From Macrostomum lignano (lineage: Eukaryota), in the NCBI GenBank assembly GCA_002269645.1, contig NIVC01002072.1, positions 12,733 through 76,732 on the forward strand: a stretch of DNA of 64,000 nucleotides. The letters run 5' to 3'. Of this stretch, positions 11,301 through 62,951 are shown in pieces (position 1 is the first letter of the stretch; each line of letters begins with the position of its first letter). The position numbers were made by a program, and so were the translations under genes. The notes beneath the pieces are model-generated. The model was not told the origin of the DNA. It worked only from the letters and a program-made list of their open reading frames with translations, and did not search any database.

Positions 11301-13245
11301 GGGCGACCACCAAGAGACAGGGGCGCCCACCAAGAGACAGATGTGATCACCAAGAGACAGGGGGCGATCACCAAGAGACAGGTGTGATCACCAAGAGACA
11401 GGGGGCGACCACCAAGAGACAGGGGGCGACCACAAAGAGACAGGGGGCCACCAAGAGACAGGGGCGCCCACCAAGAGACAGGTGTGATCACCAAGAGACA
11501 GATGTGATCACCAAGAGACAGGTGTGATCACCAAGAGACAGGTGTGATCACCAAGAGACAGATGTGATCACCAAGAGACAGGGGCGCCCACCAAGAGACA
11601 TATGTGATCACCAAGAGACAGGTGTGATCACCAAGAGACAGGGGCGCCCACCAAGAGACAGGTGTGATCACCAAGAGACAGATGTGATCACCAAGAGACA
11701 GGTGTGATCACCAAGAGACAGGTGTGATCACCAAGAGACAGATGTGATCACCAAGAGACAGGGGCGCCCACCAAGAGACAGATGTGATCACCAAGAGACA
11801 GGTGTGATCACCAAGAGACAGGGGCGCCCACCAAGAGACAGGTGTGATCACCAAGAGACAGGTGTGATCACCAAGAGACAGGGGCGCCCACCAAGAGACA
11901 GGTGTGATCACCAAGAGACAGGTGTGATCACCAAGAGACAGGGGCGCCCACCAAGAGACAGGTGTGATCACCAAGAGACAGGGGCGCCCACCAAGAGACA
12001 GGGGCGCCCACCAAGAGACAGGTGTGATCACCAAGAGACAGATGTGATCACCAAGAGACAGATGTGATCACCAAGAGACAGGTGTGATCACCAAGAGACA
12101 GATGTGATCACCAAGAGACAGGTGTGATCACCAAGAGACAGATGTGATCACCAAGAGACAGGTGTGATCACCAAGAGACAGATGTGATCACCAAGAGACA
12201 GATGTGATCACCAAGAGACAGGTGTGATCACCAAGAGACAGGGGGCGCCCACCAAGAGACAGATGTGATCACCAAGAGACAGATGTGATCACCAAGAGAC
12301 AGATGTGATCACCAAGAGACAGATGTGATCACCAAGAGACAGGTGTGATCACCAAGAGACAGGGGGCGCCCACCAAGAGACAGATGTGATCACCAAGAGA
12401 CAGATGTGATCACCAAGAGACAGATGTGATCACCAAGAGACAGATGTGATCACCAAGAGACAGATGTGATCACCAAGAGACAGATGTGATCACCAAGAGA
12501 CAGGGGGCGCCCACCAAGAGACAGATGTGATCACCAAGAGACAGATGTGATCACCAAGAGACAGGTGTGATCACCAAGAGACAGATGTGATCACCAAGAG
12601 ACAGGTGTGATCACCAAGAGACAGATGTGATCACCAAGAGACAGATGTGATCACCAAGAGACAGGTGTGATCACCAAGAGACAGGGGGCGACCACAAAGA
12701 GACAGGGGGCCACCACCAAGAGACAGGGGCGATCACCAAGAGACAGGGGCGATCACCAAGAGACAGGGGCGATCACCAAGAGACATGGGCGACCACCAAG
12801 AGACAGGGGCGACCACCTAGAGACATGGGCGATCACCAAGAGACAGGGGCGATCACCAAGAGACAGGGGCACTCACCAAGAGACAGGGGGCGACCACCAA
12901 GAGACAGGGGCGATCACCAAGAGACAGGGGCGATCACCAAGAGACAGGGGGCGACCACCAAGAGACAGGGGCGACCACCAAGAGACAGGGGGCGACCACC
13001 AAGAGACAGATGTGATCACCAAGAGACGGACGATCACCAAGAGACAGGGGCGATTACCAAGAGACAGGGGCGATCACCAAGAGACATGGGCGACCACCAA
13101 GAGACAGGGGCGATCACCAAGAGACAGGGGCGATCACCAAGAGACAGGGGCGATCACCAAGAGACATGGGCGACCACCAAGAGACAGGGGCGACCACCTA
13201 GAGACAGGGGCGATCACCAAGAGACAGGGGCGCCCAACAAGAGAT
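5382..13245 (+). repeat. About 7.9-kb 20-bp satellite: constant CACCAAGAGACAG core plus variable ATGTGAT/GTGTGAT/GGG(G)CGCC/GGGCGAC end; higher-order structure
   Basis: Roughly 390 units. Rare variants recur at spacings of 827, 909, 1736 and 3411 bp. Confidence 0.98.
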
Positions 13246-20500: not shown

Positions 20501-22642
20501 TTAGCTACTGGACTTAGACTTAATTAATGCGAATTTTCAACTACGCAATACGAGACGACTGCAAGTTGTTTTGTTTAAATGAAGGCCATTAAAATGCCTG
20601 AGAATGGCATAGACGCAGTTGAAAAGAAAATGAAGTGAGTATGTGTGACATGCGCAACCTCTGAACTTACACCGGGCGTGCGACTTTGTTTGTGATTTGT
20701 GAATGGATAGGTCGAAAAATTAAGTAGCAATTTGTGTAGTGTATGGATTTCAATGTCTGGGTATGGATGTAAGTGTCAGGGTATGGATTTCAATGTCTGG
20801 GTATGGATGTAAGTGTCAGGGTATGGATTTCAATGTCTGGGTATGGATGTAAGTGTCAGGGTATTGATGTAAGTGTCAGGGTATGAATATAAGTGTCAGG
20901 GTATGAATATAAGTGTCAGGGTATGAATATAAGTGTCAGGGTATGGATATTAGTGTCAAGGTATTGATGTAAGTCTCAGGGTATGAATATAAGTGTCAGG
21001 GTATGGATATAAGTGTCAGGGTATGGATATAAGTGTCAGGGTATGGATATAAATATCAGGGCATGGATATAAGTGGCAGGGTATGGATATAAGTGTCAGG
21101 GTATGGATGTAAGTGTCAGGGTATGGATATAAATATCAGGGTAAGGATATAAGTGTCAGGGCATGGATATAAGTGTCAGGGTATGGATATAAATATCAGG
21201 GCATGGATATAAGTGGCAGGGTATGGATATAAGTGTCAGGGTATGGATGTAAGTGTCAGGGTATGGATATAAATATCAGGGTAAGGATATAAGTGTCATA
21301 ATATCGCTATACGTGTCAGGGTATGGATATAAGTGTCAGGATATGGATATAAGTGTCAGAGTATGAATATAAGTGTCAGGGTATGGATGTAAGTGTCAGG
21401 GTATGGATATAGGTGTCAGGGTATGGATATAAATATCAGGTAAGGATATAAGTGTCATAATATCGCTATACGTGTCAGGGTATGGATATAAGTGTCAGGA
21501 TATGGATATAAGTGTCAGAGTATGAATATAAGTGTCAGGGTATGGATGTAAGTGTCAGGGTATGGATATTAGTGTCAGGGTATGGATATTAGTGTCAGGG
21601 CATTGATGTAAGTATCAGGGTTCAGATATAAGTGTCAAGGTATTGATGCAAGTGTTAGGGTATAGATATAAGTGTCAGGGCATTGATGTAAGTATCAGGG
21701 TTCAGATATAAGTGTCAAGGTATTGATGCAAGTGTTAGGGTATAGATATAAGTGTCAGGGTATTGATGTAAGTATCAGGGTTCAGATATAAGTGTCAAGG
21801 TATTGATGCAAGTGTTAGGGTATAGATATAAGTGTCAGGGCATTGATGTAAGTGTCAGGGTTCAGACAGAATGGAATGCAATGAAAATCAGATGAAGCAG
21901 CAGCATGCACTAACCGATACATATTGTGATCATTCTCAGGCAGCAAGTCCACATCGTGAAATATGTAACAGTAGGCCGGGAATATCTTGGCCGACTCAAC
22001 GAATCCAATATTGAACAGCAGGCCGCGGTTGAATCGCGTGGTGCCCGCCTGTTCGACGACAAATATTCGATAGTCGAGCTGTTGCCTGCGCAGCAGCGGA
22101 TGCAGACTCGACATCAGCAGTCTCAGGTGCGGATCCCGATTCCTATACGGCACAATAATGGCAACTCGTTGCCTAGCAACGCAGTGTTCCGGCTGGCAAC
22201 CGCCGTGCCTGATGTAGGACAGGGTAGACTGCAGTTCGGCCCAGGTAGGAGCCAAACTCGGGTCAGATTTCACGGGGATTTTATTCCCCAACAGGCCGGG
22301 CGGGTCCTCGGGACACGCAGGCAAATTGGATTTGGCCAGCCGGCTGGCTAGAGAGGCCGGGTCCGCCAGCTCGGAGGCTGTCGTATTCGTTGGCCTAGTT
22401 GGCCTTGCCGCCGCTGTTGTCGCCATGGCAACTGGCACTGCATCGGCTTTGTACTTGGTCCATGTGACTGGGCCCAGCATAGATTGAGATGAACTAAACC
22501 AATTATGCAGCAGCCACAGGCCCATGAGGGCCATCAGTGCCAGGCAGACAGACCGAATGACTCTCTTTGATGCAAGGCAATTCAGCCAGTTCACGCTGAC
22601 AGCGCCTGAGGCGCTGGAGCCACTGCTGGAACTTGGCGTCGC
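17579..22642 (-). CDS. B4GALT: Beta-1,4-galactosyltransferase family (GT7) type II Golgi glycosyltransferase
   Basis: Exons (minus strand): 22642-21915, 20393-20112, 18496-18352 and probably 17590-17579 (HLT*); phases are consistent and junctions are GT-AG. Motifs: N-terminal TM segment, VAIIVPYRNR, FNRGLLFNIG, IFHDVDLLP (DxD), RCGANPRH, LPYGAYFGG, YFGWGAEDDD, KMIKH, DGLNS. The ORF-track start at 22699 is GTG, so an upstream ATG exon is needed; candidate ATGCATTAT|gtaagt at 23537-23529 is speculative. Confidence 0.93.
17678..18260 (+). repeat. 30-bp minisatellite (TAGTGAATCACATGATCCAGACTAGCTAAT) in the last B4GALT intron
   Basis: About 18 direct copies. Confidence 0.96.
18770..20075 (+). repeat. 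7/14-bp satellite (GGATCTA GGATCTG)n in a B4GALT intron
   Basis: Directly visible. Confidence 0.97.
20743..21865 (+). repeat. 20-bp minisatellite (GTATGGATATAAGTGTCAGG) in a B4GALT intron
   Basis: About 55 variant copies. Confidence 0.97.
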
Positions 22643-22844
22643 CTGCACAGTTGGGTAAGTGGGGCGAATACCAACTGTTAATGAAATGCTATTTTGCACT
22701 AGACGAATCTAGTTCTCTTTAAACTGTCTTATCCAAAAAATAAGTTTGAAAATGAACTAATGCATAGGATTCTTGCAGAGTAAGCAATTAAGTCCTATCT
22801 CTGAAATTATTATCAAGCTATCAAGTACTAACCAACTTTTAATT

Positions 22845-23153
22845 ATTAATAATAATTGATTACACCTGCCCCAATTAGACCATATGTGCAACCGATAGCT
22901 CAGCAGCAGCTATAGCGCGGCGCATCTGAAGGCTTCATAGCATACAGCTGTTCAGTCCAAGGACTGGGGGGTCGCCACACACACCCTCAATTACCCCAGC
23001 TAATGCTGGCATCCATTTTACAGCTGGCTGAACTGAAGCAATGCAGAATTAAGTGTCTTGCTAAAAGGACACAAATTGTTCCAGTGGGATTGGGAATCGA
23101 ACCCAGACCTTCAAGTCTTGAATCTGACATTTTAAGCACTAGGCTATAGCCCC
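22845..23153 (-). mobile_element. tRNA-derived CORE-SINE, CpG-decayed copy
   Basis: Reverse complement aligns end to end with 62087-62390: tRNA head, CORE-like block and (ATT)n tail. Confidence 0.88.
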
Positions 23154-24559
23154 TTATTATACCAGCTACAATCCCCCATGTAAGTACTTTAATGGCACTT
23201 AAATGACTGAGTAATTAGACAATAAAATGTTATTAGAAAGGCTAAAACATGGGAATAAAGTTTAAACCATAGTTATTTACTCCTTCAAAGCATTGGACTA
23301 TTAAGATGCTTAACTATTATGTTTAACTGCCTGCTAGATGTCTAATGTTTTTAGGTCAGCCCAGGGTGGATAATGTCAAAAAAAACTGAAAGCAATATCC
23401 AATTCCTACTTCTGCTAAGCCTCCAAAATGAACTCAGCCTAGGCCTGAGCAAGTTGCCAGTATCTGCTGTCATTGAGCTAGGCTTAATAGACCTGCTAGC
23501 ACTCCATATGCTAAGTTTTTCAACTTACATAATGCATTTAACCTAGTATCTAGGCTTGAAATTGTGTGGCTTTTATGAGTATCTCACTATAGCTAATATA
23601 CTTGCTACCCTAGTGGGTATATAAGGTAGGGCATCCACTTTAACTTTAAGGCCTGTCATATTGAGCAATGTCATTATAGAAGAATTTGGCACTAGATAAA
23701 ATGTCTTTCAGGATGATATGTTGGCTCTTCTGCTCTTTTTTGTGATAGACTTAGAGTCAACTATGTGCTTTGTTAGTCCTTCTACAAAGATAGCAGCTAT
23801 TGGCTAGTCCTATACAAAAGCTTTGATATTTTGCTAGCTATTTTGCTACTTACTCTTGCTTATACTAACAACATTGCACTGCTCTGCCACAGCTGTAGTT
23901 GCTACCTAATCTCATATAGCAAAATAATATATCTAATTTTATAATCATATTTATACAAGTCTAACAATGCTATTTATATAAGCAAAAATGCAAGCTACAT
24001 TTGGCTTTCAATAACATATCTATATATATCTAATCTAGCAAATGTTCATTGTTCAAACTGATCTATTACATGTAGATATGTTTAATGAATTCTGCCTATG
24101 CTGAAGATTTAGATTTTTCTAGGCCTAGGCCTAACTATAATGAAACAGACAATGAAATGGAAAGAAGCCCAATATATAATAAAATGTTCCACATAGGCCC
24201 TAGCTTAGGCTAAAAGTAAAACCAGAAAAAATAGCTAGGCCTAATTAATAAATTAGGAATAGTAGGCCTAATTAGGCCCCTATGACATTTAATGAAAGCC
24301 AAAATTGGTAAAATAATAAATTATTAATTATATTAAAATAATTGTTCATATTCAATCAAACAATACTAACTAAAGCCCAAAGAGATTCTATCACAAAGTA
24401 AAAAATATCGGTGATGAGAAATACTGACTTTAATTTAAACTATCATTAGAATAATTAATTATATTATATTATTATTAATATTATTTTATTAGGTGTAAAA
24501 ATAAATAGATCTTTCTTTTTTAATAGCTTTTCTTATTAAGCATAGTCATATTAATAGCC

Positions 24560-24950
24560 ATGACTATGGCAAAACGCTATGGCCTGCCCTCAGCGGCACA
24601 ACACAGCTTAAATTACATGGCGCCGCCTTTGCTCACTACTTGTCCAAATTGTCTTGTCTTTTGCTGCACTAATTAGCAAGAGAATTTGTGCCCTGTGCAA
24701 AAGTTAAAAAAACTCTATTTTAGTTGACAAATAAAAATACTTTTAAATCATAGTTAACAATTGACTTCACGTAATTAGTGCAATCTGAAATAGCGATTTA
24801 CGTTAACATACTTAACCCATTATTAAGATTAGGTAGTATTGTTTTTCTACGTCTTAAAATTGTTAAATTTAAAATGGTTGATTCCAAGATAAGTATACTA
24901 TTTTTCTCTTACCCACCTTATCTATAGATTCACCCGTCTGGCTTAGAAAT
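24560..24950. promoter_or_regulatory. Putative bidirectional promoter core between head-to-head B4GALT and PACS
   Basis: A CpG-retaining patch inside a CpG desert. YY1-like CATGGCGCCGCC at 24616-24627; about 400 bp upstream of the PACS ATG. Confidence 0.4.
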
Positions 24951-25358
24951 TTTTAATTAGGAACGACTGCTACATTTACTAATCTTCCTTGTACCCACTT
25001 TAGCATTTTATGGTAACCCTCAAAGCCTTTTCAGGCAAAGTTCACTAGTTGATATTAGAGGACTAATTTATTTTAACATTCTTTAGTTTTGTAGACTGTT
25101 AGACAATTAAGCCCTTAAAAGTTCAAAGTGACATGATTTTTCAAGAGTAGACATCGATCCTAGCTAGTTTCATAGTAAAATCTTTGACTAAACTAAAGAA
25201 AAAGCACCCTTATGTAGCTATCCATAAGCAATAGGCCATAGCAGTTATACCAAATATAAATATTATCAATTAGGGCCTATTCACATTGTATTTAAGGCAC
25301 ACCATATTTGATACTAGGGCCTAGAGACAAAATCTAAGGCAAATCTATAAGCCTAGTT

Positions 25359-28300
25359 ATGGCATCAAATGTAAAACCTTCATTGTCCTCGGACCGCATG
25401 TCTGCTTTTTGGGAAAGTGAGAAGTCATCACCATGCATTATACCCAGGTATGTTTTTATTCCAAAAATATTTAGCTTATTATTTTTAGGTACCATACTAA
25501 ATTATACTATAATTCTATACTAAGTTACTTTTTATTGTTCTTTATTACATTTGTTAGATTAGGCCTAGATTAATCTATAAAATACTAATAGGAGAATTCC
25601 TAAGTCAATGGGAATGTAATTGACCAAAAAGAATATTAAATGATCCTAGGGATAGTTTTGACTGCATTTAGAAATTATATTCTTTTGTAAGGAATTTAAA
25701 TAGGAGATAAAACTATTAAATAGAATTAGGATCAGGCCTCCCAATGGGGCAGTTGTGTTATGCTAGTATTTAAAATTAATTGCCAAGGTTTTGTAGCCAT
25801 TCCAAAAATTAAAACTTTTGTTTCAAAAGGCAAGCACTCAGATTAATCTTTTTTGTCAAGATGTTAAACAAGAATGACAACCATTTTTGCATATTTTTGT
25901 TAAATATAAAGCCTTCTTTTTTAAAATAATTAGTCTAGTCTTTATCATATGGTTTTTTATAGCACAATTTTTTGTATTGGCACAAAAATTATCAAGGCCT
26001 TCATTATTGCCATTGCCATTTTAATTATTAAATTGCCAAAATGATTATCATTTGTTATTAAAGTGACTATTACCAAAGTGAACATGTTTTTGACAAAAAT
26101 TTACATTTTACAAATATTTTCTTTACAAGATTTTACACTCAACCAAGTTAAATGCCCAATGTATCATTTTAGCTTCTTTTCTAAATTCTTCTTTAGAATA
26201 AATTTTATATAACTAAAATTGCCAAAACCTTTGTAACAGGAATGAGATCTACAGAGTTAGTCCAGCTAGCCTATAAACCCTCACTGAAGTCTATAAATAA
26301 TATATAATGGACTTCTTCAGGTTTAGGTTAATAAATTAGTTGCAGTTTTGATAAGACTATTATTCTGTCTTTTTATGTGTATTTTATAGTGCTGATTTCA
26401 AGTTTAAGCTTTATTTTTATGTAGCTTTATATAGCTTAAAGCCAACGCTAATATATATGGAAGAAATGTTTTAGTATAGAAAGTTTTGATGGGAATTGAT
26501 TTTACTTTATACTAACCTAAACTTGAATAGAAGCATAGGGACCTATTGAAGATTATATTGATTAATTCTAGCCCATACTATATATAAATAAAGCTTGAAC
26601 TGAAACCTGCCCATCTAAAACTTATATAAAAATTATAATCTTATCAAAACTGCCACTAATTTATCAACCTATTAAAGAAATTATTCATTCTTCAACTTTA
26701 GAATACTTATACTTTACCTTTTTGTTTTTATAGAAATGTTATAAAATTAGAAGTATTTTACCAACCTAAACCTGAAGAAGTCCTAAATATGAATTTATAA
26801 TAGAAAATTAATGTGATTTGCAACCTACCAAAATTGTTAATCTTTTAGATAATACTCCAATAAAAACTAACAATCTTTTTGCTTAACCTTAATTAAAAAC
26901 ATTGGACAAGGGTGGTCCCAATGGTTCCTGCGGTTTAGGCTACTGGTTTTGTCTACTTTAATATTTTTAGTGGATTATCTTGGTAGGTTGCTGCCACCAG
27001 GCTCTTGATGTTCCCTAATCCTAAGATATAGTATTTAAAGAACTGAGTCAAGACAACAAATAAAGTATTTTAAGTTTGACACACAGTTTATAAAAAATGA
27101 TAATTGATCAAATGTTAATTGCACAAAAGTGTTTTCTTACATTACTTTCCCCTTTCTAAGTGCTTGGTCAAGACTCCCAGTTTTAAGGCAAGACTCCTCT
27201 TAGAGCAATTCTAAGTCCTATTCCCTTATCTCCTTTTACCTTGAATTCCTTTTAATAGAATTTTTTAAGTTAGAAACTGCACTCGGAAGACAAAGTGGAT
27301 ACTTTTTCCAAGAGCCCAACTGCTCTTTACTACGAGTAATGTAATCCAAAATTTGCAGTGTATTTACATAGTAGTGTAAAAGCATATTTGTCCCATGTCT
27401 ATTTATACCTCTAAATTTTGCCCTACTACAGCATGAAACAAGTCATATAAGTATAAGTTTAACAATTTTTGTCAGAACCAACATTTTACTCCTAAGCTAT
27501 ATAGTAAAATAATGAGGTTATGCCTATTGTAATTAATTATATAAATGTATTTGTTTGTTAATTGATATTTAAAAATAAAAATCTAAATAAAAACCTATAT
27601 ATTGTAGCCTAGAAATAGTTTTGCAAATAATAATCTTCAAAGGCAGAGATCCAAGGGCCATGGCCCCTCTCCCCCTTAGCCATGGCCAACAAAATTTAGG
27701 CCATATTTTTGGCCTATAACTATGCAAGGTCTATTTCAATATTGGATTATAGTGCTTGGTATAGCTTGTCCCCCTCTACTTCAATTTCTGAATTCACCTG
27801 GGTAGTCTTAAACTCTGTCTACAACAAGAACAATTTTTGTTTTATTGATATTCTACGAGGGTTGTCCCAAAAATAGTGGGAAAACTGGCAATTGTAACTT
27901 TACCCCCTACCCCTTGTTCTAATTATAGGCATAACTTTTGAATGAATTGACATTTTTACCTTAAGTTGCATCAAATTCAAATATCACAGTCAGCCTCTGT
28001 ACCAGTTTTCCTGCTATTTCTGGGACAGCCCCTATAGTTAAAAATACTATAAAATTGAAAATAGACAAACAGAAATGTTAAAAAGGGATTTTTCCTAAAA
28101 GTATAGAATTTTTAGTAGTTTTGTAAATATCCTTACTAGCATCAATATTGTTTAATTTCTAATTAGTAACTCTGGATGAAGACTACATGAAATCTATCGG
28201 AGTAATGAAGAACCTGTTAGGATACTTGGAATAGGGTGTATAAAAATGGACAATCTAGAGTTGACAGTTAAATGGCTAAACATCATTTGTTGTGCTGATG

Positions 28301-31300
28301 TTGGCATGGGGATGATATTTAGGTCATTCAAAAAGTACATTATGTTATATCATTAGTATTGCTAACTTGAGCCATCTGCATAACATTTCACTACCCAGGG
28401 TGCTGCTAATCCGCATTGATCGCATGTGCGTCTATGCCAACAATGGCGATGAAGCCGGCCCAGTTTACTTGGCCATCCGCATGCATGCTGGCAGCAGGCG
28501 CACCCTCAGATCTCAGCAGATCACTGTGCCAGAGCGGGGTCAGGTGTTCGAGCATCCAATCACTGTGGAGATTCAATATCCGCACGCTATTAAGCGAGAT
28601 AATCCTTTGCTGATTATGCTGCAACGGCGTAAGAAGTATAGAAATTTAGGCTTCAAGACAATGGGCCTAGCGCAGGTGAGAGTTTTATTGTTTAAGTGCC
28701 TGTTTTCAGCGCTAAGAACTTTCGGTCAAATATCCCCAGACGAGTCTGTTAGTCAAATAGACTCAAATATCCCCAGATGAGTCTGTTAGTCAAATGGACT
28801 CAAATATCCCCAGACGAGTCTGTTAGTCAAATGGACTCAAATATCCCCAGACGAGTCTGCTAGTCAAATGGACTCAAATATCCCCAGACGATTCTGCTAC
28901 TCAAATGGACTCAAATATCCCCAGACGAGTCTGTTAGTCAAATGGACTCAAATATCCCCAGACGAGTCTGTTAGTCAAATGGACTCAAATATCCCCAGAC
29001 GAGTCTGTTAGTCAAATGCACTCAAATATCACCAGATGAGTCTGTTAGTCAAATGGACTCAAATATCCCCAGACGAGTCTGTTAGTCAAATGGACTCAAA
29101 TATCCCCAGACGAGTCTGTTAGTCAAATGGACTCAAATATCCCCAGACGAGTCTGCTAGTCAAATGGACTCAAATATCCCCAGACGAGTCTGTTAGTCAA
29201 ATGGACTCAAATATCCCCAGACGAGTCTGTTAGTCAAATGGACTCAAATATCCCCAGACGAGTCTGTTAGTCAAATGGACTCAAATATCCCCAGACGAGT
29301 CTGTTAGTCAAATGGACTCAAATATCCCCAGATGAGTCTGCTAGTCAAATGGACTCAAATATCCTCAGATGAGTCTGTTAGTCAGATGGACTCCAATATC
29401 CCCAGATGAGTCTGCTAGTCAAATGGACTCAAATATCCTCAGATGAGTCTGTTAGTCAGATGGACTCCAATATCCCCAGATGAGTCTGTTAGTCAAATGG
29501 AATTAAATATCCTCAGATGAGTCTGTTAGTTCGTCAAATAGAATTAAATATCCCCAGTTGAGTCTGTTAGTCAAATACTATTTACTGGTAAGTTGGGATT
29601 GTTGATTAAGTATCCCTTAATAGGGACGCATTGCAGTTCGACAATCTCAATGACTCAACTCAAAATTAATGTAACTCATTCAAGCCTCCAAATCTTGAGC
29701 TACTTACAATGTTGCAGGTGAATCTGTCGGACGTGCTCCAGTGCCGCCTGCTGCAGCACCAGCTCGACCTGCTTCCGGAGTCCAGCAGCAAAGTTGACCA
29801 GTCCTCTATGTCCGGCAAGTCCTCCTCTGCCGCCGCCGCGGCCGCTGCAAACCGCCGCCCTGTCGGGTTTCTCCACGTGGTGCGGCTGGAGACGCTGCCA
29901 CCGCCGCGCGATCTGGCCGCCTGTAGGAAGGACTTCGCCGCTGCCGTCGCCGGCGCCGTTGCGTCTGGCCGCTGGACAGATGAGGCCATCAGCGATGAGG
30001 ACGAGACGGACCATGGCGTGGATGAAGACGAGGAGGATGAGAAGATTAAGAAGGACGCTGTTAATAAGGTGATGAAAGATACCAGTTGAATTTGTGTCTG
30101 TCAGTTACACCTGGTGTGTGTCAGTTACACCTGGTGTGTGTCAGTTACACCTGGTGCCTGTCAGTTACACCTGGTGTGTCAGTTACACCTGGTGTGTGTC
30201 AGTTACACCTGGTGTGTGTCAGTTACACCTGGTGTGTGTCAGTTACACCTGGTGTCTGTCAGTTACACCTGGTGTGTGTCAGTTACACCTGGTGTGTGTC
30301 AGTTACACCTGGTGTCTGTCAGTTACACCTGGTGTGTGTCAGTTACACCTGGTGTGTGTCAGTTACACCTGGTGTCTGTCAGTTACACCTGGTGTCTGTC
30401 AGTTACACCTGGTGTCTGTCAGTTACACCTGGTGTCTGTCAGTTACACCTGGTGTCTGTCAGTTACACCTGGTGTCTGTCAGTTACACCTGGTGTCTGTC
30501 AGTTACACCTGGTGTGTGTCAGTTACACCTGGTGTGTGTCAGTTACACCTGGTGTGTGTCAGTTACACCTGGTGTGTGTCAGTTACACCTGGTGTGTGTC
30601 AGTTACACCTGGTGTGTGTCAGTTACACCTGGTGTGTGTCAGTTACACCTGGTGTGTGTCAGTTACACCTGGTGCCTGTCAGTTACACCTGGTGTGTGTC
30701 AGTTACACCTTGTGTCTGTCAGTTACACCTGATGCCTGTCAGTTACACCTGGTGTGTGTCAGTTACACCTGGTGTCTGTCAGTTACACCTGATGCCTGTC
30801 AGTTACACCTGATGCCTGTCAGTTACACCTGGTGTCTGTCAGTTACACCTCGTGAATGTCAGTTACTCCTGGTGCCTGTAAGTTACACCTTGTGTCTGTC
30901 AGTTACACCTTGTGTCTGTCAGCTACACCTTGTGTCTGTCAGTTACACCTTGTGTCTGTCAACTACACCTTGTATCTGTCAGTTACACCTTGTGTCTGTC
31001 AGCTACACCTTGTGTCTGTCAGCTACACCTTGTGTCTGTCAGCTACACCTGTGAGCCTATCTAATCGCACCCTAAAAGTGAACTCGTATTGAACTATTTC
31101 GCTTCTCATTTCAGCCAAAAGAATGGCGCCAGAAGTTCAAGCTTTTTATGGACGAAAATTTCTCTACCATATTGAAGCTTAAAAAGCTGAAGGGTGGCCA
31201 ACAGTTTGAGGTGAGCGGAAAATGATACTGCAGTTTTTGCATTATTTATGATTTATGATTAGTTAGTTCCCTCATCTACTTAGTAAGTATCTAGGGCAAA

Positions 31301-42914: not shown

Positions 42915-43170
42915 AGAGAGCTCAGTTTAGGTCATAGATAGTTCGGTTTAGCTCATAGATAGCTCGGTTTAGGTCAGATAGCTCGGTTTAGCTCATAGAT
43001 AGTTTGGTTTAGCTCATAGATAGTTCAGTTTAGGTCATGGATAGCTCGGTTTAGGTCATAGATAGCTCGGTTTAGGTCATAGATAGCTCAGTTTAGGTCA
43101 TAGATAGCTCGGTTTAGGTCATAGACATCTCAGATTCTCAGGTAAGGTCATAGATAGCTCAGTTTAGGTT
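42915..43170 (+). repeat. 21-bp minisatellite (GATAGCTCGGTTTAGGTCATA)
   Basis: About 11 copies. Confidence 0.92.
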
Positions 43171-44276: not shown

Positions 44277-44368
44277 GCTCATTTAACCCAGATTCTAGTC
44301 TAGATGCTTAGGCCAATGGTGGGAGCTGGCAATCCAGATCGCTCACAACCGATCTACTAAATGCTTGC

Positions 44369-45615: not shown

Positions 45616-47110
45616 CTGTATTTCGTTGCTACCACAATATCTTGTTGACTTTGTGCATTAAATATAGCCGCAGAAGGCGACTTGTTTTGCTAAAATGTAT
45701 TTACATGTACTCGATACGAAGGCTTCACTGCTTTAGTCAGTTTTTCTTTGCATAACTTATTTCGGCACCTATTATCAATGGTTTAGAAATTCAATGGCTA
45801 TCTTTGTCCTGGACTATAGTTCTCAGTGTAAGAAAGCTACTTAATATATGTAAATTAATTCACTACTGCAGTTGTCTAGTCGTTACTATTTAATTATGAA
45901 CGATTCATTTGAATGTGCAATCTCGAGCTACATGCTTGTTGATTTGTTGATTATTTACTTAACAAGCTATGTGGATAGTCATCAAAATACAGTTTTATGC
46001 ATGTGGATGCAAAAAAATATGAAAACTTAATTAGTACTTAAATTTGTGCTTGGAAAAGTTTCATGATGGATGTCATTGGTTTTTAAATAGGCGCTACATG
46101 CAGTGGTGATAAAATGCAATAATAAGCAAACGTTATTTGATAGTGTGTATTAGTCCTTTAGATTTATCAATATATGATGAATTTAAATATCTTCGCCACT
46201 AAAAATATATCTAAAGTATGTTTACCTAAAAAATCTGGAAAAGCCGAACTTGTACGCATTTTAACAAACAACACTATACAAGTAATGCAAACGACACAGT
46301 TAATCTACTAAATGTAAACAGAAGTCAATGGTATTTTTATTTTACTAGGTTTTTTAGATAATATACTTCTGCAGACGGTGCTTAGCAAATTTTTTGGTTG
46401 CAGTTTTTTATTACTTTTTAATATTAATTTTTACCATCAGTGCAGCACAGCAGTGCAGATCTGCATCTTGTCTAGATATAAACTCCTAACTTTTTATTTC
46501 GAATTGATTGCCTACATTTTGCGTAATTTAAGCAGCTAATAAAGAAATGGCCTCATTGGCTTCCAGGGTTTTTCTTCCTAAGCAGTGTAAGCTTCTAATC
46601 ATTTCTAATTTTTATGCACTTGGCCTACCTACACTAACAGCAAATCACCAATTAATGCTTGCCCAGGCATGCAATATCTTATATTTTTTGTTTAGTTTTA
46701 TTAATTACTTTTACCTTAAGCATATTTGCAAAGTATTTTGCTTAATAAATATGCAACCAATGTATCCATGAGTCATAGCCTATTAATTATTAATGCCAAA
46801 GCCACCTACAAAGATTCCAGTTGTCTATTTTCCACTGTAACATCTTTCAAATATTTATTCTAGAATCCAAAGACAAAGTAGCATCCTTGCAATATAAGGA
46901 AACTTGTATTGTTTCCTGCAATGAAACTAAGAAACATAGTAAGTTTCAAAGATTCTTTAAAAGGCCTTTAATAAAGATCCCTTGCCAATATGCAATCCTG
47001 ATATTTAATTTCAGGCAAATTTAATTTTAAATATAAGTTTAAGGCAATTTTTTAGGCATTGCAAAGGTTTAAGCTAAGGCCTATTCTAGAAATGCCTGGG
47101 CCATATATGG

Positions 47111-48347
47111 ATGGTGACTAGTCATTTCGTCAAAAACCTTTTAGTTTTAGTCAAAAGCCTTTTCGTCAAATAGTCATTTGGTCAGTTCGTCAAAGTGTGT
47201 GCATAGTTTCAAATGTAAATTGAAGTTACTCTAGATCCATAGTCAGGATCATGTTATGGTATACGCCAGAATAAAAAGTCCCCTAAAAAATCTACGCCAC
47301 TTCATACTGAAATGTACACCAAGGAGGTCCTAGGAACTTACGCCAGGTTTTCTAGGCTTTGCAACAATAAATGACCTTTTTGCATGTTACACATTTTTAA
47401 CAATAAAAATTTAACAAATGTGTGGTTTTCATTTAAAGTAAATTGGCTTATAGTAATGCCAACAAAAATCAATTTTTTGTTTAACTATTTTTTAGAAAAT
47501 TAACACAATTAGTTTGCATGGAATTTTAAATTTTTATAAATCACAAATAGTTATGAACTTTCATCTTACAAGTTTTATGCTTTTTATGATTTTATAATAA
47601 GATTCTGAGGTTACGGCGTTATGCCAACAATTATTAATATTAACTTTGGCATGAAGGTTGGAGTTGGCATATGCTGCTTGGCATATTTATGCCACAACAT
47701 CACCAAAAAATATGCAAATATATTTTGCCTCATTTTTTTATGCCAATTAATTATATGCCAAAAAAAAGAAAAATTTTCAATTGTATGCTGGAAATTTTTG
47801 GCATAATGTATATCATCCTGACTATGGCTCTAGATTAGTCACATGTATACTCAATAGGTTAGCATTAAAAAAGAAGTATACTGCTTGTTTAAAATAACAT
47901 TTCTAAGAAAAGGCACAAATTGTAGTAGTTAGCTAGTCAGATTATTCATAATTTGCATAGTAAAATATCAAAACCATGCAATTGTACCATTATTGATATT
48001 AATATTAATGAAATAATATAATAAGAGCATAATTTCACTAAGTAAAATACTGTGTTCATCACAAAGCTAAGAATCAAGATGTAAAGGAAATAATTAAAAG
48101 TTAAGGTTAGGGTTATCCTTTTTCATGTTTCATTCTTAGAAACACTTTGCTTAAACAAAAGGTAGTGATGTCCTTTTGATATAGATTTATCTTGACATTA
48201 AATTATTTATTTTAAAAACTAATTAAATTATTTAAAAATTAATTACAGTGGGCTCTATTTTATCTACCGTTTGACAAAATGACCAATTTACTATTTGACA
48301 AAAAGGCTTTTGACAAAATGGTATTTGACAAAATGACCTGGAACCAT
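47111..48347. mobile_element. Foldback/MITE-like element with TT(C/T)GTCAAA subterminal repeats; hosts a nested hAT MITE
   Basis: ATGGTGACTAGTCATTTCGTCAAA versus the reverse complement of TTTGACAAAATGACCTGGAACCAT; several GTCAAA/TTTGAC copies at each end. Confidence 0.65.
47237..47827. mobile_element. hAT-type MITE with 8-bp TSD CTCTAGAT
   Basis: TIR CCATAGTCAGGAT/ATCCTGACTATGG; identical CTCTAGAT at 47229-47236 and 47828-47835. Confidence 0.88.
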
Positions 48348-49038
48348 TTGGACTATGTATAGTCTGGATCATGCTTGGTGCATGCCCAAACAAAAATCAA
48401 TAAGTACAAATGCATGCCAAAAAATTGAGTGCATACCTATTATTAAAACTCAGTTGGTATTGCAATAATAAATAACCTTTTTTACATTGTGACAATAAAT
48501 GACCTTTTTTCATTGTGTAAAAAGCCCTTTTTGACAGATAATTTAGTTAATTTTTCTGCTTTTTTTGGCAATACTATTTATATTAGAAAATTGATACATG
48601 CAAAGATTTGTTTAAATGCCTTATTACAAGCTTAAAAACTTGTAAAGTGGGAAATTTTTGCTTAAAAATGAACTTTTTTCACATTTTTTCTACTTCACAA
48701 TTACTCTTCTGCGTGATTCTATGCAGTGCACACCAGGTATATTTTCTTAGGACTGATGCACGCCAACTATACATGTCCACTTTTGGCTTGCAAGGCCAAT
48801 GCATACCCAAATTTTTGGGCATATATTATAATTTATATGATCTAGTGTGGTAAAAATCTAGCGATATTACTACTATTAGACTTATTCTTTTTAATAAGCA
48901 TGGATATATAGATAATGAAGTTAAAAATGATGGCATTTGTTATTTGCATGATACTATATAAATAGTACTATTGTTATTTATACAGTAGCTAATATAAAGA
49001 CTAGTTTTAAATATTATATAATAGTAATTTTAACAATG

Positions 49039-49603
49039 CCATAGTCAGGAAGGTGACCTTTTTGCTTGAAAATTCCAGTGTGCATAAGCTCTTCATAGTT
49101 CATTTGGTGTGCATTTAGTGTGCTCAAATCTTAAAAAAAATTGCATTTGGAATATTGCATATACAACAAAATTGCATTTGGCATACAAAAAAGTAGTATA
49201 CAAAAAGCTATTTAAAAATGCAAGTATTGTCAGTTTCTGTTACAAAAGGTATCAACATTTCAAAGAAAGGTTGCAGTTCAAAGATGATAAGAGTGCAAAA
49301 AAATTTATAAAATGTGATTATGCTATTTATTTTAAAACAATTTAAGTACCAGGACTTCATATAACTACAAGTTATTATAATTGAAAAATAGACACGAAAC
49401 TTATTTTGTTATAATCTAAATATAAATGTCAAATGGAAAAATGGAAAAAGGTCCTTTATTGTTGTAGTGCAAAAGTAAAGTTGCATAATTTTTTAATTTT
49501 GGCATACATGACAATCACATCCAATTTTTGGCGTAATTTGGCATCATAGAGACCTTTTCCCAAATTTAATTCTAGCATGCACATGCCACCTTCCTGACTA
49601 TGA
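49039..49603. mobile_element. hAT-type MITE with 8-bp TSD TAACAATG (same TIR family)
   Basis: Perfect 16-bp CATAGTCAGGAAGGTG/CACCTTCCTGACTATG; TAACAATG at 49031-49038 and 49604-49611. Confidence 0.88.
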
Positions 49604-52026
49604 TAACAATGTATTTGATTATAAATTTATCCTTTTAAAGATAAATGAGTTATATTCTTATCTATTTCTTTTAAAACACCTTTTGGTCAACTTATGGTCA
49701 ACTTTATAACTTGACCAATTTTTGAAAGTAATGTGTCTTTTAGGCAAATGAGATTTATCAACTAGAATAAAAATTGAAAAAATATAAGAAAATAATTTTT
49801 AAAAATCTTATTAGTCCTTATTCTTTGTTTAAGACTAGCAAAACTATATACAGTCTAGGTTTTTTGTAGTGTTCCGCCATAAAGAGGGTCCATATACCAT
49901 AGCCATATGCAAAACTATGGCTTATTCCAATTCTCTGTATTCCATAGCCATAGGGACCCCTATTCCTATATTCCCCTATACCCCTATACCCCTATATTCC
50001 TATAGTTCCCATAGCTGTAGCCATAGTTTTAACAAAAAGTCTAGAAAACAAAATATTTTGAATCAAGAAGATAACCTAGTGCTTAAACAATTGCAAATTA
50101 AGTTAGAAAATAAAAGAAACACTCAATTGCCTTTGTAAGATTATATTTTGTCTTTTTTCAAAGCAATAATACTTTATCGTTACTGAGAGTACTAATGCTA
50201 AACGTTTTCACATTAATAAAAATTAATGTTTGCTAGTGTTTTATTGTACTTTTTTTAGGTATATTTTAAAAGTTTCTAAGTTGATAATACAGTTTACTAA
50301 AAGTATCTTTGTTTTACTCTACCTGTTTCTAATATTTTTCAATTTTTTAACATTAATAACTATGGCTATAGGAATCTACAGAATGTGACAACAACTACCA
50401 TATTTCTGTAGACATAGCCGTAAGAGCAGCTAGCTACTGTAGGCATATTTGTAGCTTCCATAGGCACCTATTTTACCATATTTGCCATAGCTATGGCTAC
50501 AGCAAAATGCTAATTATTTGGCCTAAGTTCAAGGCTGGGATATTTTTATATATCATTATTTATATATCACCTAGCCTGATTCCTAATTCTTGATCCAACA
50601 TGATTAGGAATCATGTTGGCAATACATATGTAAGTCATTAATGGCTAAAAGTAGTCATATGACTACTGTAGCAGAGCACTTAATACAATTCAAATAGAAA
50701 GAAAGAAATAGCGGTGACTTAAATTAACTATTAAATTTATTATTAATTATTCTAGGTTATTTATTTAGTTGTAGAACTTGACAAAAAATAATATAACTTA
50801 TATTTAAAGTTACTAGGCCTAGGGGCACAGTCTTGGCAGTAGCAGAGTGACTAAGTCTAATATACTAAATATAATCTAATGTTAATTTGGTTTGGTTGGC
50901 TCTATAGCCTATAGAGCAAAATTATTTCAAATAGTCTTGTCTGGTATCACTGGACTAAGGTAACGAGACACGCCAAGCGTGAGGAGGGAGAGGAAGAGCC
51001 TACACCAAAAACACAAAACACCCGCACTCAAAACTGCAGCAAAACTGCTCCACTAAAACCTTCAATACTAACTTCAAAAATGTGGTAACAAAAATAATAA
51101 AACAGTAGATGAAATAATAGACATAATTTTCCTATAACAAGTGCTTTCCCCCTACCCCCCATAATTATTACAAAAAATCAATTTAAGTACACTAAAAAAT
51201 CAGATAAAAACTAAAAAATATTATAACGACATTGTCACAACTACTATTCTGTCCAATATCAAGTTATATATGTGTTTCCAATAAAAATAGCTAGGTAAAT
51301 TCCTAGGTTGCATCCTAGCATATGTTCATATAGGCCTAGTAAATAAAAAGTTGACAAACAATAATAGATAGTAAACTATTATTAGGATATCATTTTTATT
51401 ATATTGGAGAAAAGGCTATCTATTAGCTATCATGTCCTTTATTAACTGCCTATAGCAATAGCAATAGCAATGTTGCTATTTCTTCATAAATTTATTTTAA
51501 AATTTACTATAAAGTCCTTTTATGAGTTGATTCATAAAACAAAATTTAATTTGTCAAAGGAAGTTGTTTTACTAATAGTTTTTGTCCTAACTTAAAAGAT
51601 GATTAAAATATTATATAATAATATAAATATTATTAGATGAATATAAAAAATGTATAATATTAAAATGTATATTAAATGTATATTAAAATATTAATAGATG
51701 ATAAAAGTATTATATAATATATAATACCATAGGCATGTTTTTATTATGAGTTGATAATATTATGTATAGACCATTGCCAACAAGTTTATGCTGACATCTT
51801 AATGATAAATATTGGGTGATATGCTATAGGTGAACTATGCAGTAGCTAAGCTAATGTGTTAATATATACTGGGTAGCCATTTTAAAATAAGCAAAGACAA
51901 ATGATTCTTAAGTCAGTGTGGTTCAAATGTATTTAAAGTTAATTAAATGGGTTCAAAAGTTTGATTTAAAATAAGTAAAGTAAGCTATAAGTAGACTAGT
52001 AACAAATCAAAAATCAATTTAACAAT

Positions 52027-52171
52027 CAGGGGCCTAGTCAAGGGGCACAATGGGGACATGTCCCCCTGGAGGGGTTGGTTTACTGCCTTTGTATTTTGCT
52101 TCCATTGCTTCCATTGGAGATGGATTTATGTCTCTGCCCCCCCCTGATGTAAATCCTGGCTATGCGCCTAG
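52027..52171. mobile_element. Decayed MITE of the CAGGGGCGTAGCCAG type
   Basis: CAGGGGCCTAGTCAAGGGG ... CCTGGCTATGCGCCTAG; related to the TIRs at 35957-36580. Confidence 0.5.
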
Positions 52172-52528
52172 TAGCAATGTATAAACTTAGCCTTTGTGTT
52201 GTACTGCTGCTCAGAATACAACCTTTTGTTGAAGAGGTTTTTGTCTAGCCTATGGCTTCAGTGAAGTTCTTAAGAATATGAATAGACTTTTTGACTTAAT
52301 CTAGTATATTATATAAGGCACAATTACCATCTCACATGGCCAATTTGGCTAACATGATTGTATAACATTAAATTGAATACTGTACTCAAAAATTGGGGCT
52401 GTGCAATTCAAACCCATGAGGGCCATCCCTACACCCAAGGCATTGAAAGTTTGTCTGCCTGACTATTAGAAAGTCTGGGCCAATGTACACCTGTTAATTA
52501 TGTGTATGCTTTGTTCAATCCCCGGCAG

Positions 52529-54211
<1,683 letters not shown>

Positions 54212-61416: not shown

Positions 61417-62086
61417 CATCCCACGACAGTAGCTAATTAGCTTCGGGATGGAGAGAGAAACTTTGCCCGTCATGCGGCAGCTGAGAGTAAATTGGTGGCA
61501 TTGAGCATTCTCAATGGGATGGGAAGTTGCGGGATGCTGCGGCCAAACGGGACTCCCTCTGCATCAGTAATCAACTCATTCTGCCTCAAGCCGATTTTGG
61601 GCGAACAAAGGGATTTTTTAAACTTTTTTTACTCTGGTAGCTATAGTCAACGCTTTTAATGAGCTTAGTATCTACATTGCTGCTGAGTAGCTTTGGCAGT
61701 TGTGGCAAGCTCAAAATAGCTTTGTGCTGGCTTGTCTTGAGCCTCGACAAGAGGTGTCTGGATCCGTTTTTAATCTCTATTCAATCTTGATTTCAAATTT
61801 TTCGATAAAAGTCGAAAATAAAAGTCGAATATAAAAGTCTGGTCACTTTTTTGGCTTGTTTCCAGAAATAAAATGTCGGTTTCGCCTCAAGATTGTTTTA
61901 TGAATTAAGTTTTCATGGAGGAGGAGGTGCGGGGCTCGTGTGGCGTTGACAGAAAGTGCGTGTGTAAGCTAAGGGTGCATTCTATGAGTGGAAAGATGCC
62001 AAAGAAGAAGAGTATGAAGTTTTGTTTTTTGCTGCTTATGTTTTGAAGTTGCAGGTACAGGTTTACAGGTAATGCATACATGCAGA

Positions 62087-62390
62087 GGGGTTGTAGCCCA
62101 GTGGTTAGAGCGTCGGACTCATGTCTTGAAGGTCAGGGGTTCGATTCCCGATCCCCCTGGAACAATTTATGTCCTTGAGCAAGACACTTAACTCTGCGTT
62201 GCTTCAGTTCACCCAGCTGTAAAATGGGTGCCAGCATTAGCTGGGGTAATTAAAGGTGTGCGTGGCGACTCCCCAGTCATTGAACTGAACAGCCGTACGC
62301 AGCCTTCAGATGCGCCTTGCAATAGCTGCGGCTGAGCTGTCGTTGCACATCTGCCCATTAGGACAGGAGTAATCAATTATTATATTATTA
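62087..62390 (+). mobile_element. tRNA-derived CORE-SINE (MIR-like central domain)
   Basis: A box TAGCCCAGTGG, B box GGTTCGATTCC. TGTCCTTGAGCAAGACACTTAAC...CTTCAGTTCACCCAGCTGTAAAATGGG resembles the MIR CORE. (ATT)n tail; second copy at 22845-23153. Confidence 0.88.
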
Positions 62391-62951
62391 CATGGAAAAT
62401 TTTGTCCTATCTTTATAGTGTTTTTCAAGGATTTATCCTTATTATCCTTATAGTGCCACAACCCCTACATTCAGCCCTACCATCGGCTTCATCTTTTACA
62501 GTAAAACTTTCTAGCATTTTATTCGATCGAAAACAGTTAATTATAACTATTTGTAATGTGAATAAATTTGTGCTACAAATGCCAAACGTTTCCAAGCTGA
62601 GAAAATTTGAATGAATCTAATTTTTTGTTATAAAATAGCCACACTCCAGGCTTGGCCCCGCACTATAGGGACAAACGAGAGGCTCCTGATGGTAGCTCTT
62701 CTCCTATTTAGTTAGAAGAGAACCAGACTCCGTCTGGAGCAGCCTTTCATGCTGTCGTCCACTCCAACTCTCTCGCTGTTTCATTTGCCGTTTAAATTAT
62801 TTACGACATCGCATAGCCAGGACTGCATGGTTGGCTCACGCTTGCTTCCAGTTAAAACCGGCTTTAACGAACTCTTTTTTAACTGCCTGAGAAAACCTGG
62901 CAAAGTGTGGATGGCTGCTCGGAGCCTGCGCTGTATCAAGCTGATTCGAGA

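What the first reader, a model, noticed from the sequence alone, without database searches (positions are those of the whole stretch)
22845..28350. CpG desert over the 5' ends of B4GALT and PACS, with a SINE pair recording methyl-CpG decay
Seen: I find no CpG between 23100 and 24408 (about 1.3 kb, where tens would be expected) and very few from 25000 to 28350, including PACS exon 1. Equally AT-rich DNA elsewhere (4400-5100, 55600-56400) and downstream exons keep many CpGs. Of 12 CpGs in the SINE at 62087-62390, the copy at 22845-23153 has 7 changed to TG/CA, 1 to CT and 4 retained. Established: CpG-to-TpG/CpA is the signature of germline 5mC deamination. Inference: methylation focused on kilobase domains flanking the TSS of housekeeping genes, the inverse of vertebrate CpG islands and narrower than typical invertebrate gene-body methylation.
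Basis: partly seen in the sequence, partly recalled or inferred. Interest (0 to 1): 0.8.

Follow-up and report, generated by a model that had tools for sequence, protein, structure and literature searches.

The report
CpG-free 5' blocks in flatworm genes
In the flatworm Macrostomum lignano, kilobase blocks of non-coding DNA just upstream of the first coding exon of some conserved genes have lost nearly all CpG sites while neighbouring DNA keeps them, which looks like the footprint of sharply localised germline DNA methylation in an animal whose methylation pattern has not been mapped.

Summary
Window 23100-24408 has 0 CpG (35.6 expected, 70 GpC), and 25000-28350 has 9 (75 expected). The SINE counts are exactly as reported. 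The window is Macrostomum lignano (assembly GCA_002269645.1, contig NIVC01002072.1), a flatworm reported to keep DNMT1 and DNMT3 and to have low 5mC.

Across 136 kb of tandem-free sequence from this species, AT-rich windows have a bimodal CpG o/e. Every depleted window lies in a sharp-edged block ending at the first GC-rich coding exon of B4GALT (three paralogues), PACS or ATP5PB. Coding exons and later introns keep their CpGs.

Two SINE copies of equal non-CpG divergence lost 8/13 CpGs (desert edge) and 3/12 (elsewhere), so loss follows place rather than age.

The best explanation is germline methylation confined to 5' outron or first-intron blocks. The phrase "inverse of CpG islands" is not supported, because transcription starts are unknown and the likely promoter patch keeps its CpGs. 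Whether decay continues today could not be resolved. No methylation data were available.

The parts
21914..22642 (-). First coding exon of B4GALT (BOX15_Mlig013496g2). The reading frame starts in frame directly at the acceptor ...ctgtgcag|GCGACG with no ATG, so the site is probably a spliced-leader trans-splice acceptor and the leader supplies the AUG.
   Evidence: tblastn of P0002. The annotated protein is marked 'partial' and starts ATPSSS. The leader sequence ends in ATG (PMC8629364). CpG o/e 0.82.
22849..23154 (-). tRNA-derived SINE copy A at the edge of desert 1. It has lost 8 of 13 ancestral CpGs, 7 of them by transition.
23154..24408 (.). Desert 1: unique AT-rich DNA with 0 CpG and 67 GpC, lying upstream of the B4GALT acceptor (putative outron or 5' flank).
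   Evidence: The desert state is also present in copy L004, and partly in L001, of the same assembly.
24409..24999 (.). CpG-keeping patch (11 CpG, o/e 0.84, 30% GC) between the two deserts. It is a candidate shared promoter region for B4GALT and PACS.
   Evidence: 7 of 11 CpGs are shared with L001. Alignment.
24531..24626 (.). 96-bp block nearly identical between the window and L001, with 4 conserved CpGs. It has no Rfam match and its function is unknown (candidate core promoter).
25361..25448 (+). PACS exon 1 (ATG to the GT donor), lying inside the AT-rich block. It has 2 CpGs and one synonymous CpG>CpA difference from L001.
   Evidence: The annotated 5' end of PACS in L005 corresponds to window ~25359. 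The resemblance to the human PACS1 N-terminus is from memory.
25000..28350 (.). Desert 2: PACS 5' flank plus intron 1 (25449-28378). It has 9 CpG against 75 expected and ends sharply at the exon 2 acceptor.
28379..28677 (+). PACS exon 2 (N-terminal C2 domain), the first GC-rich exon, where CpGs resume.
   Evidence: Pfam PF25332, E=6e-19. CpG o/e 0.77.
46523..52450 (.).
52528..53006 (+). First GC-rich exon of a mitochondrial ATP synthase subunit b-like gene, which continues at 53816-54211.
   Evidence: Pfam PF05405, E=1e-16 for the second exon. Acceptor region shown.
62085..62395 (+). SINE copy B with an intact tRNA-like head, in CpG-normal DNA. It keeps 9 of 12 ancestral CpGs.

Best explanation
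The deserts are the mutational footprint of dense CpG methylation in the heritable cell lineage (germ cells or the neoblasts that produce them). The methylation is confined to discrete 1-6 kb non-coding blocks that run from a point in AT-rich upstream DNA to the first GC-rich coding exon of certain conserved genes. These blocks are therefore the outron or first intron plus its immediate flank. Deamination of 5-methylcytosine has converted nearly all CpGs in the blocks to TpG/CpA. Exons, later introns, other intergenic DNA and a short candidate promoter patch stay unmethylated and keep their CpGs. Shown here: the depletion, its sharp edges, its recurrence at five 5' gene regions, and the place-dependent CpG loss in a SINE. 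Inferred: that methylation is the cause, that it acts in the germline, that the blocks are transcribed 5' non-coding sequence, and that the patch at 24409-24999 is a promoter.
For: (1) Depth of depletion: 0 of 35.6 and 9 of 75 expected CpGs, with GpC at or above expectation. (2) It is not a base-composition effect. AT-rich tandem-free 400-bp windows from 136 kb of M. lignano sequence are bimodal, with modes at 0-0.3 and 0.6-1.0 and nothing between 0.4 and 0.5. In L003 the density falls from 49 CpG in 2.1 kb to 15 in 3.7 kb at position 6085 while GC stays at 0.33. (3) Location: all 49 depleted tandem-free windows lie in blocks that end at the first GC-rich exon of B4GALT (window, L002 and L003, whose upstream DNA is not homologous), PACS and ATP5PB. 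The blocks are unique sequence, not repeats. (4) The desert state is kept in the other copies of each locus in the same assembly. (5) SINE probe: with a 4-copy consensus, A and B are equally diverged at non-CpG sites (5.9%). A, at the desert edge, lost 8 of 13 ancestral CpGs, 7 by transition (P=2e-5 against the generic rate). B lost 3 of 12. Copy D, 20% diverged and in CpG-normal DNA, lost only 4 of 13. (6) Exons next to the deserts have a mildly lower CpG o/e (0.44-0.83) than downstream exons (1.0-1.15). (7) The species is reported to keep DNMT1 and DNMT3 and to have low global 5mC (PMC11292947, PMC9246332, PMC10658182). The deserts hold only 2.3% of the window's CpGs in 17% of its length, so full methylation there would still give a low global level.
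Against: No methylation data were seen, and the primary paper (Wasik 2015) could not be read. The TpG/CpA excess in the deserts is weak (1.14 against 1.08, p=0.08). Comparisons between locus copies do not show more CG<->TG/CA differences than generic transition rates predict (21 observed, 24.6 expected), so ongoing decay is not demonstrated. Exons of these conserved genes are not CpG-depleted, which is unlike every well-described invertebrate gene-body methylation pattern. Transcription starts are unknown. The sample is five 5' regions, three of them reached through one gene family. The SINE consensus rests on four copies.
Confidence: 0.6

Rival explanations
1. Relic footprint: the blocks were heavily methylated in an ancestor but are no longer methylated. 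The deserts persist only because CpGs re-accumulate slowly.
For: CG<->TG/CA differences between locus copies are fully accounted for by generic T>C gains (21 observed, 24.6 expected). Young CpG-rich insertions sit intact inside deserts: L001 4071-5069 and 8436-9663, and L003 8665-8905. Global 5mC is reported as low.
Against: An o/e of 0.0-0.15 leaves very little room for recovery. SINE A decayed after it inserted. DNMT1 and DNMT3 are reported as retained. The test cannot separate this model from equilibrium, which predicts about 28 differences against 24.6 (my calculation).
Confidence: 0.2
2. Methylation-independent cause: CpG avoidance or a CpG-directed mutation bias specific to outron or regulatory DNA, for example selection against binding of CpG-reading factors, or transcription-associated deamination.
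For: The blocks coincide with putative outrons or first introns. They have their own composition quirks: CC/GG enrichment and the TAGGCCTA palindrome. The TpG/CpA excess is weak.
Against: As far as I know, no mechanism other than 5mC deamination removes CpG this completely while leaving GpC at 1.3-2.0 of expectation. The loss in SINE A is mostly by transition (7 of 8). Selection would have to act on every CpG across 6 kb of poorly conserved sequence (6.6% mismatch between copies against 3.4% in other non-coding DNA).
Confidence: 0.1
3. Age artefact: a uniform weak CpG decay acts everywhere. The deserts are simply the oldest undisturbed DNA, and the rest (minisatellites, transposons) is too young to have decayed.
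For: 40% of the window is tandem arrays. The deserts are unique sequence and more diverged between copies than other non-coding DNA.
Against: Ancient coding exons keep a CpG o/e of about 1. In CpG-normal non-coding DNA, CpGs are as stable between copies as other dinucleotides (140 of 160 shared). SINE copies A and B have equal non-CpG divergence but different CpG loss, and the oldest copy D keeps its CpGs. The sharp edge in L003 at constant GC also argues against it.
Confidence: 0.05
4. Heterochromatin or transposon-directed methylation of intergenic DNA that only happens to lie next to these genes.
For: The blocks are AT-rich, gene-poor and contain old inverted-repeat remnants (26292-26424 / 26578-26799).
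Against: No shared repeats were found among deserts or with other loci. One block is an intron inside PACS. All five end exactly at a first coding exon. Identifiable mobile elements elsewhere (SINE B, C and D, and the L001 insertions) are not depleted.
Confidence: 0.05

Closest known systems
Mosaic ('fractional') invertebrate methylation read from bimodal CpG o/e (Ciona, sea urchin, molluscs, annelids; named from my own knowledge of the field and from the summary in PMC11292947)
   Same: There are two classes of DNA, one near o/e 1 and one strongly depleted. Depletion is associated with conserved genes. The species retains DNMT1 and DNMT3.
   Different: In the classical pattern the depleted class is the gene body including exons. 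Here exons (o/e 0.8-1.15) and later introns are spared, and only the 5' non-coding block is depleted, down to o/e 0-0.15, which is deeper than the vertebrate genome average.
5'-biased gene-body methylation of holometabolous insects (honeybee, Nasonia, silkworm; from my own knowledge)
   Same: A kilobase-scale methylated zone near the start of the transcription unit of conserved genes, with low global methylation.
   Different: In insects the 5' exons are the main targets. Here the first exons are at most mildly affected, and the non-coding outron or first intron carries the footprint.
Vertebrate CpG-island promoters in a depleted background
   Same: A short CpG-keeping patch (24409-24999), most of whose CpGs are conserved between copies, is flanked on both sides by depleted DNA.
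   Different: The depleted background is only a few kb wide rather than genome-wide. The patch is 30% GC and would not meet CpG-island criteria. Its promoter role is not shown.
tRNA-derived SINEs used as clocks of methyl-CpG decay (for example Alu in primates; from my own knowledge)
   Same: A CpG-rich, tRNA-headed retroposon whose copies lose CpGs mostly by transition.
   Different: Here the decay differs between copies of equal age according to where they landed. That makes the SINE a probe of local methylation rather than of age.

Membership tests
Invertebrate mosaic methylation footprint | Bimodal CpG o/e among genomic segments of similar base composition | tested here: met
   98 AT-rich tandem-free 400-bp windows. 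49 have o/e below 0.4, none lie between 0.4 and 0.5, and the rest centre on 0.6-1.0.
Invertebrate mosaic methylation footprint | The species has maintenance and de novo CpG methyltransferases (DNMT1, DNMT3) | not tested
   Taken from the literature only (PMC9246332, PMC11292947).
Invertebrate mosaic methylation footprint | The depleted class is the body, including exons, of conserved and broadly expressed genes | tested here: not met
   B4GALT, PACS and ATP5PB exons have o/e 0.77-1.15; later PACS introns have o/e 0.82-0.84.
Invertebrate mosaic methylation footprint | 5mC actually present on the depleted class in germline DNA | not testable with these tools
   No methylation data are available here, and Wasik 2015 is not held.
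Insect-type 5'-biased gene-body methylation | The methylated or depleted zone starts just downstream of the transcription start site | tested here: inconclusive
   The blocks end at the first coding exon and begin at a sharp edge in upstream DNA. No transcription start data are available. The B4GALT 5' end is a splice acceptor.
Insect-type 5'-biased gene-body methylation | Exons are preferentially targeted | tested here: not met
   First exons have o/e 0.44-0.83, against 0-0.15 in the adjoining non-coding block.
Vertebrate-type CpG island | Genome-wide CpG-depleted background | tested here: not met
   The non-desert AT-rich mode lies at 0.6-1.0 and GC-rich windows centre on 0.6-1.0.
Vertebrate-type CpG island | A GC-rich (above 50%), CpG-rich (o/e above 0.6) patch of at least 200 bp at a promoter | tested here: not met
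   24409-24999 has o/e 0.84 but only 30% GC. Its promoter identity is not shown.
tRNA-derived SINE | tRNA-like 5' head with an internal pol III B box | tested here: met
   ARAGORN calls a tRNA-Met-like gene at 62085-62159. Rfam tRNA scores 30.2 bits for copy B and 23.3 bits for copy A. GGTTCGATTCC is read directly in both copies.
tRNA-derived SINE | Multiple dispersed copies at unrelated loci | tested here: met
   Two copies in the window, two in L002, and an orthologous copy in L001.
tRNA-derived SINE | Target-site duplications and an A- or AT-rich tail | tested here: inconclusive
   An AT-rich tail is visible. No clean duplication could be identified by eye.

The most novel reading that the evidence does not exclude
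Macrostomum lignano concentrates near-complete germline CpG methylation on the discarded 5' non-coding part of transcription units (the outron or first intron of spliced-leader trans-spliced, conserved genes) and spares exons. This would be a methylation architecture not described in any animal, and it would link DNA methylation to outron definition or to suppression of spurious initiation upstream of trans-splice sites.
Probability: 0.2. Interest if true: 0.75.

Novelty: new variant of a known kind. Interest (0 to 1): 0.55.

Why it matters
[quoted passage not shown] M. lignano is the flatworm model that still has DNMT1 and DNMT3. If the footprint reflects real methylation, it predicts exactly where the species' small amount of 5mC sits: about 2% of CpGs, in sharp-edged 5' non-coding blocks of conserved genes. 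It also predicts that this pattern differs from the exon-centred gene-body methylation taken to be ancestral for bilaterians. That can be tested directly with existing or easily produced bisulfite or nanopore data. It would bear on what methylation does in an animal that combines trans-splicing, operons and a very repeat-rich polyploid genome.

Tried and rejected
(1) CpG sharing between copies of the locus (window against L001: 1 of 9 in the desert against 140 of 160 elsewhere; L003 against L008: 9 of 22 against 78 of 83) first looked like proof of ongoing hypermutability. I withdrew that reading. In a CpG-poor, TG/CA-rich block, ordinary T>C changes create enough new CpGs to explain it (21 observed against 24.6 expected). 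Allowing for saturation, the equilibrium model predicts about 28, so the test has no power.

(2) Three-copy polarisation: 4 of 10 ancestral desert CpGs changed, but all on the L002 branch, so the direction is ambiguous.

(3) The CpG-rich 'oasis' in L003 (8665-8905) is a young insertion with a 12-bp target duplication and is absent from L008. It is not a promoter.

(4) A search for shared repeats or transposons among the deserts found nothing beyond two old inverted repeats.

(5) Rfam on the desert found only the SINE head.

(6) A RIP-like process was considered. TpA is not raised and the (CpA+TpG)/(ApC+GpT) ratio is about 1.36, which is not RIP-like (computed).

(7) A PACS protein query was swamped by low-complexity words, and the ATP5PB query found nothing. 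No second copy of desert 3 could therefore be fetched.

(8) Wasik et al. 2015 could not be read.
Full report
WHAT THE SEQUENCE IS. The B4GALT exon matched a Macrostomum lignano protein at 97% identity. A locus fetched through a member of that protein's cluster (L005, GCA_002269645.1 contig NIVC01002072.1) is 100% identical to window 21901-29600. The window is therefore M. lignano, assembly Mlig_3_7.

The genes are as follows:
- B4GALT on the minus strand, exons 22642-21914, 20392-20111 and 18498-18352.
- PACS on the plus strand, from exon 1 (25361-25448) to a last exon near 41783-41920.
- An MRPL27-like gene ending at 45615.
- A mitochondrial ATP synthase subunit b-like gene from about 52528.
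- Two lineage-specific genes on the minus strand: a glycine-rich ORF at 57120-57914 and a PAN/mucin-like ORF at 60472-61236.

Forty per cent of the window is tandem arrays. These have to be masked before any dinucleotide statistic is read.

THE OBSERVATION. It holds. Window 23100-24408 has 0 CpG where 35.6 are expected, and 70 GpC. Window 25000-28350 has 9 against 75 expected.

First, a 591-bp patch at 24409-24999 keeps 11 CpGs (o/e 0.84) and splits the desert in two. Second, a third desert of about 5.9 kb (46523-52450) lies directly upstream of the first GC-rich ATP5PB-like exon.

IS IT MORE THAN BASE COMPOSITION? Yes. I pooled the window with three other M. lignano loci (L001-L003; 136 kb), masked tandem repeats and took 400-bp windows. 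The AT-rich windows (below 42% GC) fall into two classes. Forty-nine have CpG o/e below 0.4, none lie between 0.4 and 0.5, and the rest centre on 0.6-1.0. GC-rich windows are unimodal around 0.6-1.0. GpC is at or above expectation in both classes.

The clearest single case is L003. It has 49 CpGs in 4000-6085 and then 15 in the next 3.7 kb, at an unchanged 33% GC.

WHERE THE DEPLETED DNA LIES. All 49 depleted windows belong to a few blocks. Each block ends at the acceptor of the first GC-rich coding exon of a conserved gene:
- B4GALT in the window.
- Two old B4GALT paralogues (52-53% protein identity) in L002 and L003, whose upstream DNA is unrelated.
- PACS, where the block is mainly intron 1.
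- ATP5PB.

Genes without such a block are the MRPL27-like gene (possibly downstream of PACS in an operon), PEPCK, a 2-hydroxyacid dehydrogenase, and the two lineage-specific secreted-type genes. The blocks are unique sequence with no repeats shared among them. Coding exons keep their CpGs: o/e is 0.44-0.83 in exons touching a desert and 1.0-1.15 further down. Later PACS introns are normal, at 0.82-0.84.

The B4GALT reading frames of the window and of L002 start in frame at the acceptor with no ATG. L003 has its ATG three bases after the acceptor. The M. lignano spliced leader ends in ATG, and about 30% of genes are trans-spliced, mostly conserved ones (PMC8629364). The blocks are therefore best described as outron or first intron plus flank. 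Their upstream edge could be the transcription start, but nothing here shows that.

THE PATCH AT 24409-24999. Seven of its 11 CpGs are shared with the L001 copy. It contains a 96-bp stretch (24531-24626) that is almost identical between copies and carries four conserved CpGs. It has no Rfam match. A cluster of TAGGCCTA palindromes lies 300-500 bp to its left. It is a reasonable candidate for a shared, unmethylated promoter of the divergent B4GALT and PACS genes. If so, the layout is a small-scale version of the CpG-island logic, not its inverse.

THE SINE AS A PROBE. Two more copies in L002 (C and D) let me infer 13 ancestral CpGs.
- Copies A and B are equally diverged from the consensus at non-CpG sites (5.9% each).
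- A, at the desert edge, lost 8 of 13, seven by transition (P=2e-5 against the generic rate).
- B lost 3 of 12, which is not significant.
- D is 20% diverged, sits in CpG-normal DNA and lost only 4 of 13.
- C lost 5 of 9, which is borderline.

Most of A's losses are shared with its orthologue in L001, so they predate the split of the locus copies. In this small sample, CpG loss follows place and not age. The caveat is that the consensus comes from four copies and includes A and B.

IS THE DECAY STILL GOING ON? I could not tell. CpGs in deserts are rarely shared between copies of a locus (1 of 9; 9 of 22). In CpG-normal non-coding DNA they are as stable as any dinucleotide (140 of 160 and 78 of 83). 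This looked decisive until I allowed for new CpGs arising from the abundant TpG/CpA sites. Generic transition rates alone predict 24.6 CG<->TG/CA differences in the pooled deserts, and 21 are seen. An equilibrium model with saturation predicts about 28, so the two cannot be separated. Three-copy polarisation gave 4 changes in 10 ancestral CpGs, all on one branch of uncertain direction. Young CpG-rich insertions sit intact inside deserts in L001 and L003, but they may simply be recent.

WHAT IT MOST LIKELY IS. As far as I know, only 5-methylcytosine deamination strips CpG this thoroughly while leaving GpC untouched. Reviews state that M. lignano retains DNMT1 and DNMT3 and has low 5mC. The deserts hold 2.3% of the window's CpGs in 17% of its length, so dense methylation there is compatible with a low global level.

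I therefore favour germline methylation confined to these 5' non-coding blocks (confidence 0.6). The main rival is a relic of past methylation (0.2). A methylation-independent cause (0.1), an age artefact (0.05) and repeat-directed methylation (0.05) fit the data less well, for the reasons listed under each.

COMPARISON WITH KNOWN SYSTEMS. The bimodal CpG o/e is the classical signature of mosaic invertebrate methylation. However, the defining feature that gene bodies including exons are the depleted class was tested and is not met. Insect 5'-biased methylation is the nearest in scale and position, but it targets exons. CpG islands share the 'protected patch in depleted DNA' logic, but not the genome-wide background or the GC-richness. 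I file the finding as a new variant of a known kind. It is a sequence-only inference from five 5' regions. One bisulfite or nanopore data set would settle it.

Noticed in passing
window 46523-52450: A third and largest CpG desert (46000-52450: 34 CpG against 141 expected), between an MRPL27-like gene and the first GC-rich ATP5PB-like exon. It has small CpG clusters at 47128-47341 and 50964-51023.
   Followed up: partly
window 24531-24626: A 96-bp block almost identical between the window and the L001 copy, although its surroundings differ by 7-17%. It carries 4 conserved CpGs and has no Rfam match. It contains a 38-codon ORF that is not conserved beyond the block.
   Followed up: partly
window 24120-24270, 25560, 50814, 51331: All seven copies of the palindrome TAGGCCTA in the window lie in deserts, four of them in a 150-bp cluster. 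TAGGCC and AGGCCT are 4.5-5.5 times over a Markov-1 expectation in deserts. TAGGCCTA is absent from 12 kb of CpG-normal AT-rich DNA. It is not universal, since L006-L008 have none.
   Followed up: partly
window 31935-33704: An AT-rich (35-39% GC) 35-bp minisatellite in a PACS intron has about 3 CpGs per unit, giving a CpG o/e of 2.5-2.7. This is the opposite extreme to the deserts, inside the same gene.
   Followed up: no
window 22642 (minus strand); L002 10001; L003 10001: B4GALT paralogues are annotated 'partial' with reading frames that begin in frame exactly at a splice acceptor without an ATG. This fits the spliced leader (which ends in ATG) donating the start codon.
   Followed up: partly
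L001 8436-9663: In another copy of the locus, a 1.2-kb element with terminal inverted sequences and an internal 14-bp satellite (GCTAGCCGAAATCT) has inserted into the SINE copy with a TTGAGG target duplication. It is CpG-rich (o/e 1.0) inside an otherwise depleted block.
   Followed up: partly
window 22643-28378 against L001: Desert DNA differs about twice as much between the two copies as other unique non-coding DNA (6.6% against 3.4% mismatches, exons 1.1%), and has many more indels.
   Followed up: no
window 42000-45615: An MRPL27-like gene follows PACS on the same strand about 2.4 kb downstream. Much of that gap is tandem repeat, and the gene has no desert of its own. It is possibly the second gene of an operon.
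   Followed up: no
window 26292-26424 and 26578-26799; 47121-47194 and 48270-48337: Old inverted-repeat pairs (77-80% identity) inside the deserts, possibly remnants of small DNA transposons.
   Followed up: no
window 52500-54211: The ATP synthase subunit b-like protein found no relative at all in the word-indexed protein search, although Pfam recognises its second exon (E=1e-16). The gene seems not to be annotated in the public M. lignano protein set.
   Followed up: no
window 5407-13228: A 7.8-kb array of a 20-bp unit (about 390 copies) and many other minisatellites. Together, tandem arrays make up 40% of the window and by themselves produce several trivial CpG-poor stretches (5.4-13.2 kb, 18.7-20.1 kb, 30.1-31.0 kb, 34.4-35.4 kb).
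   Followed up: yes
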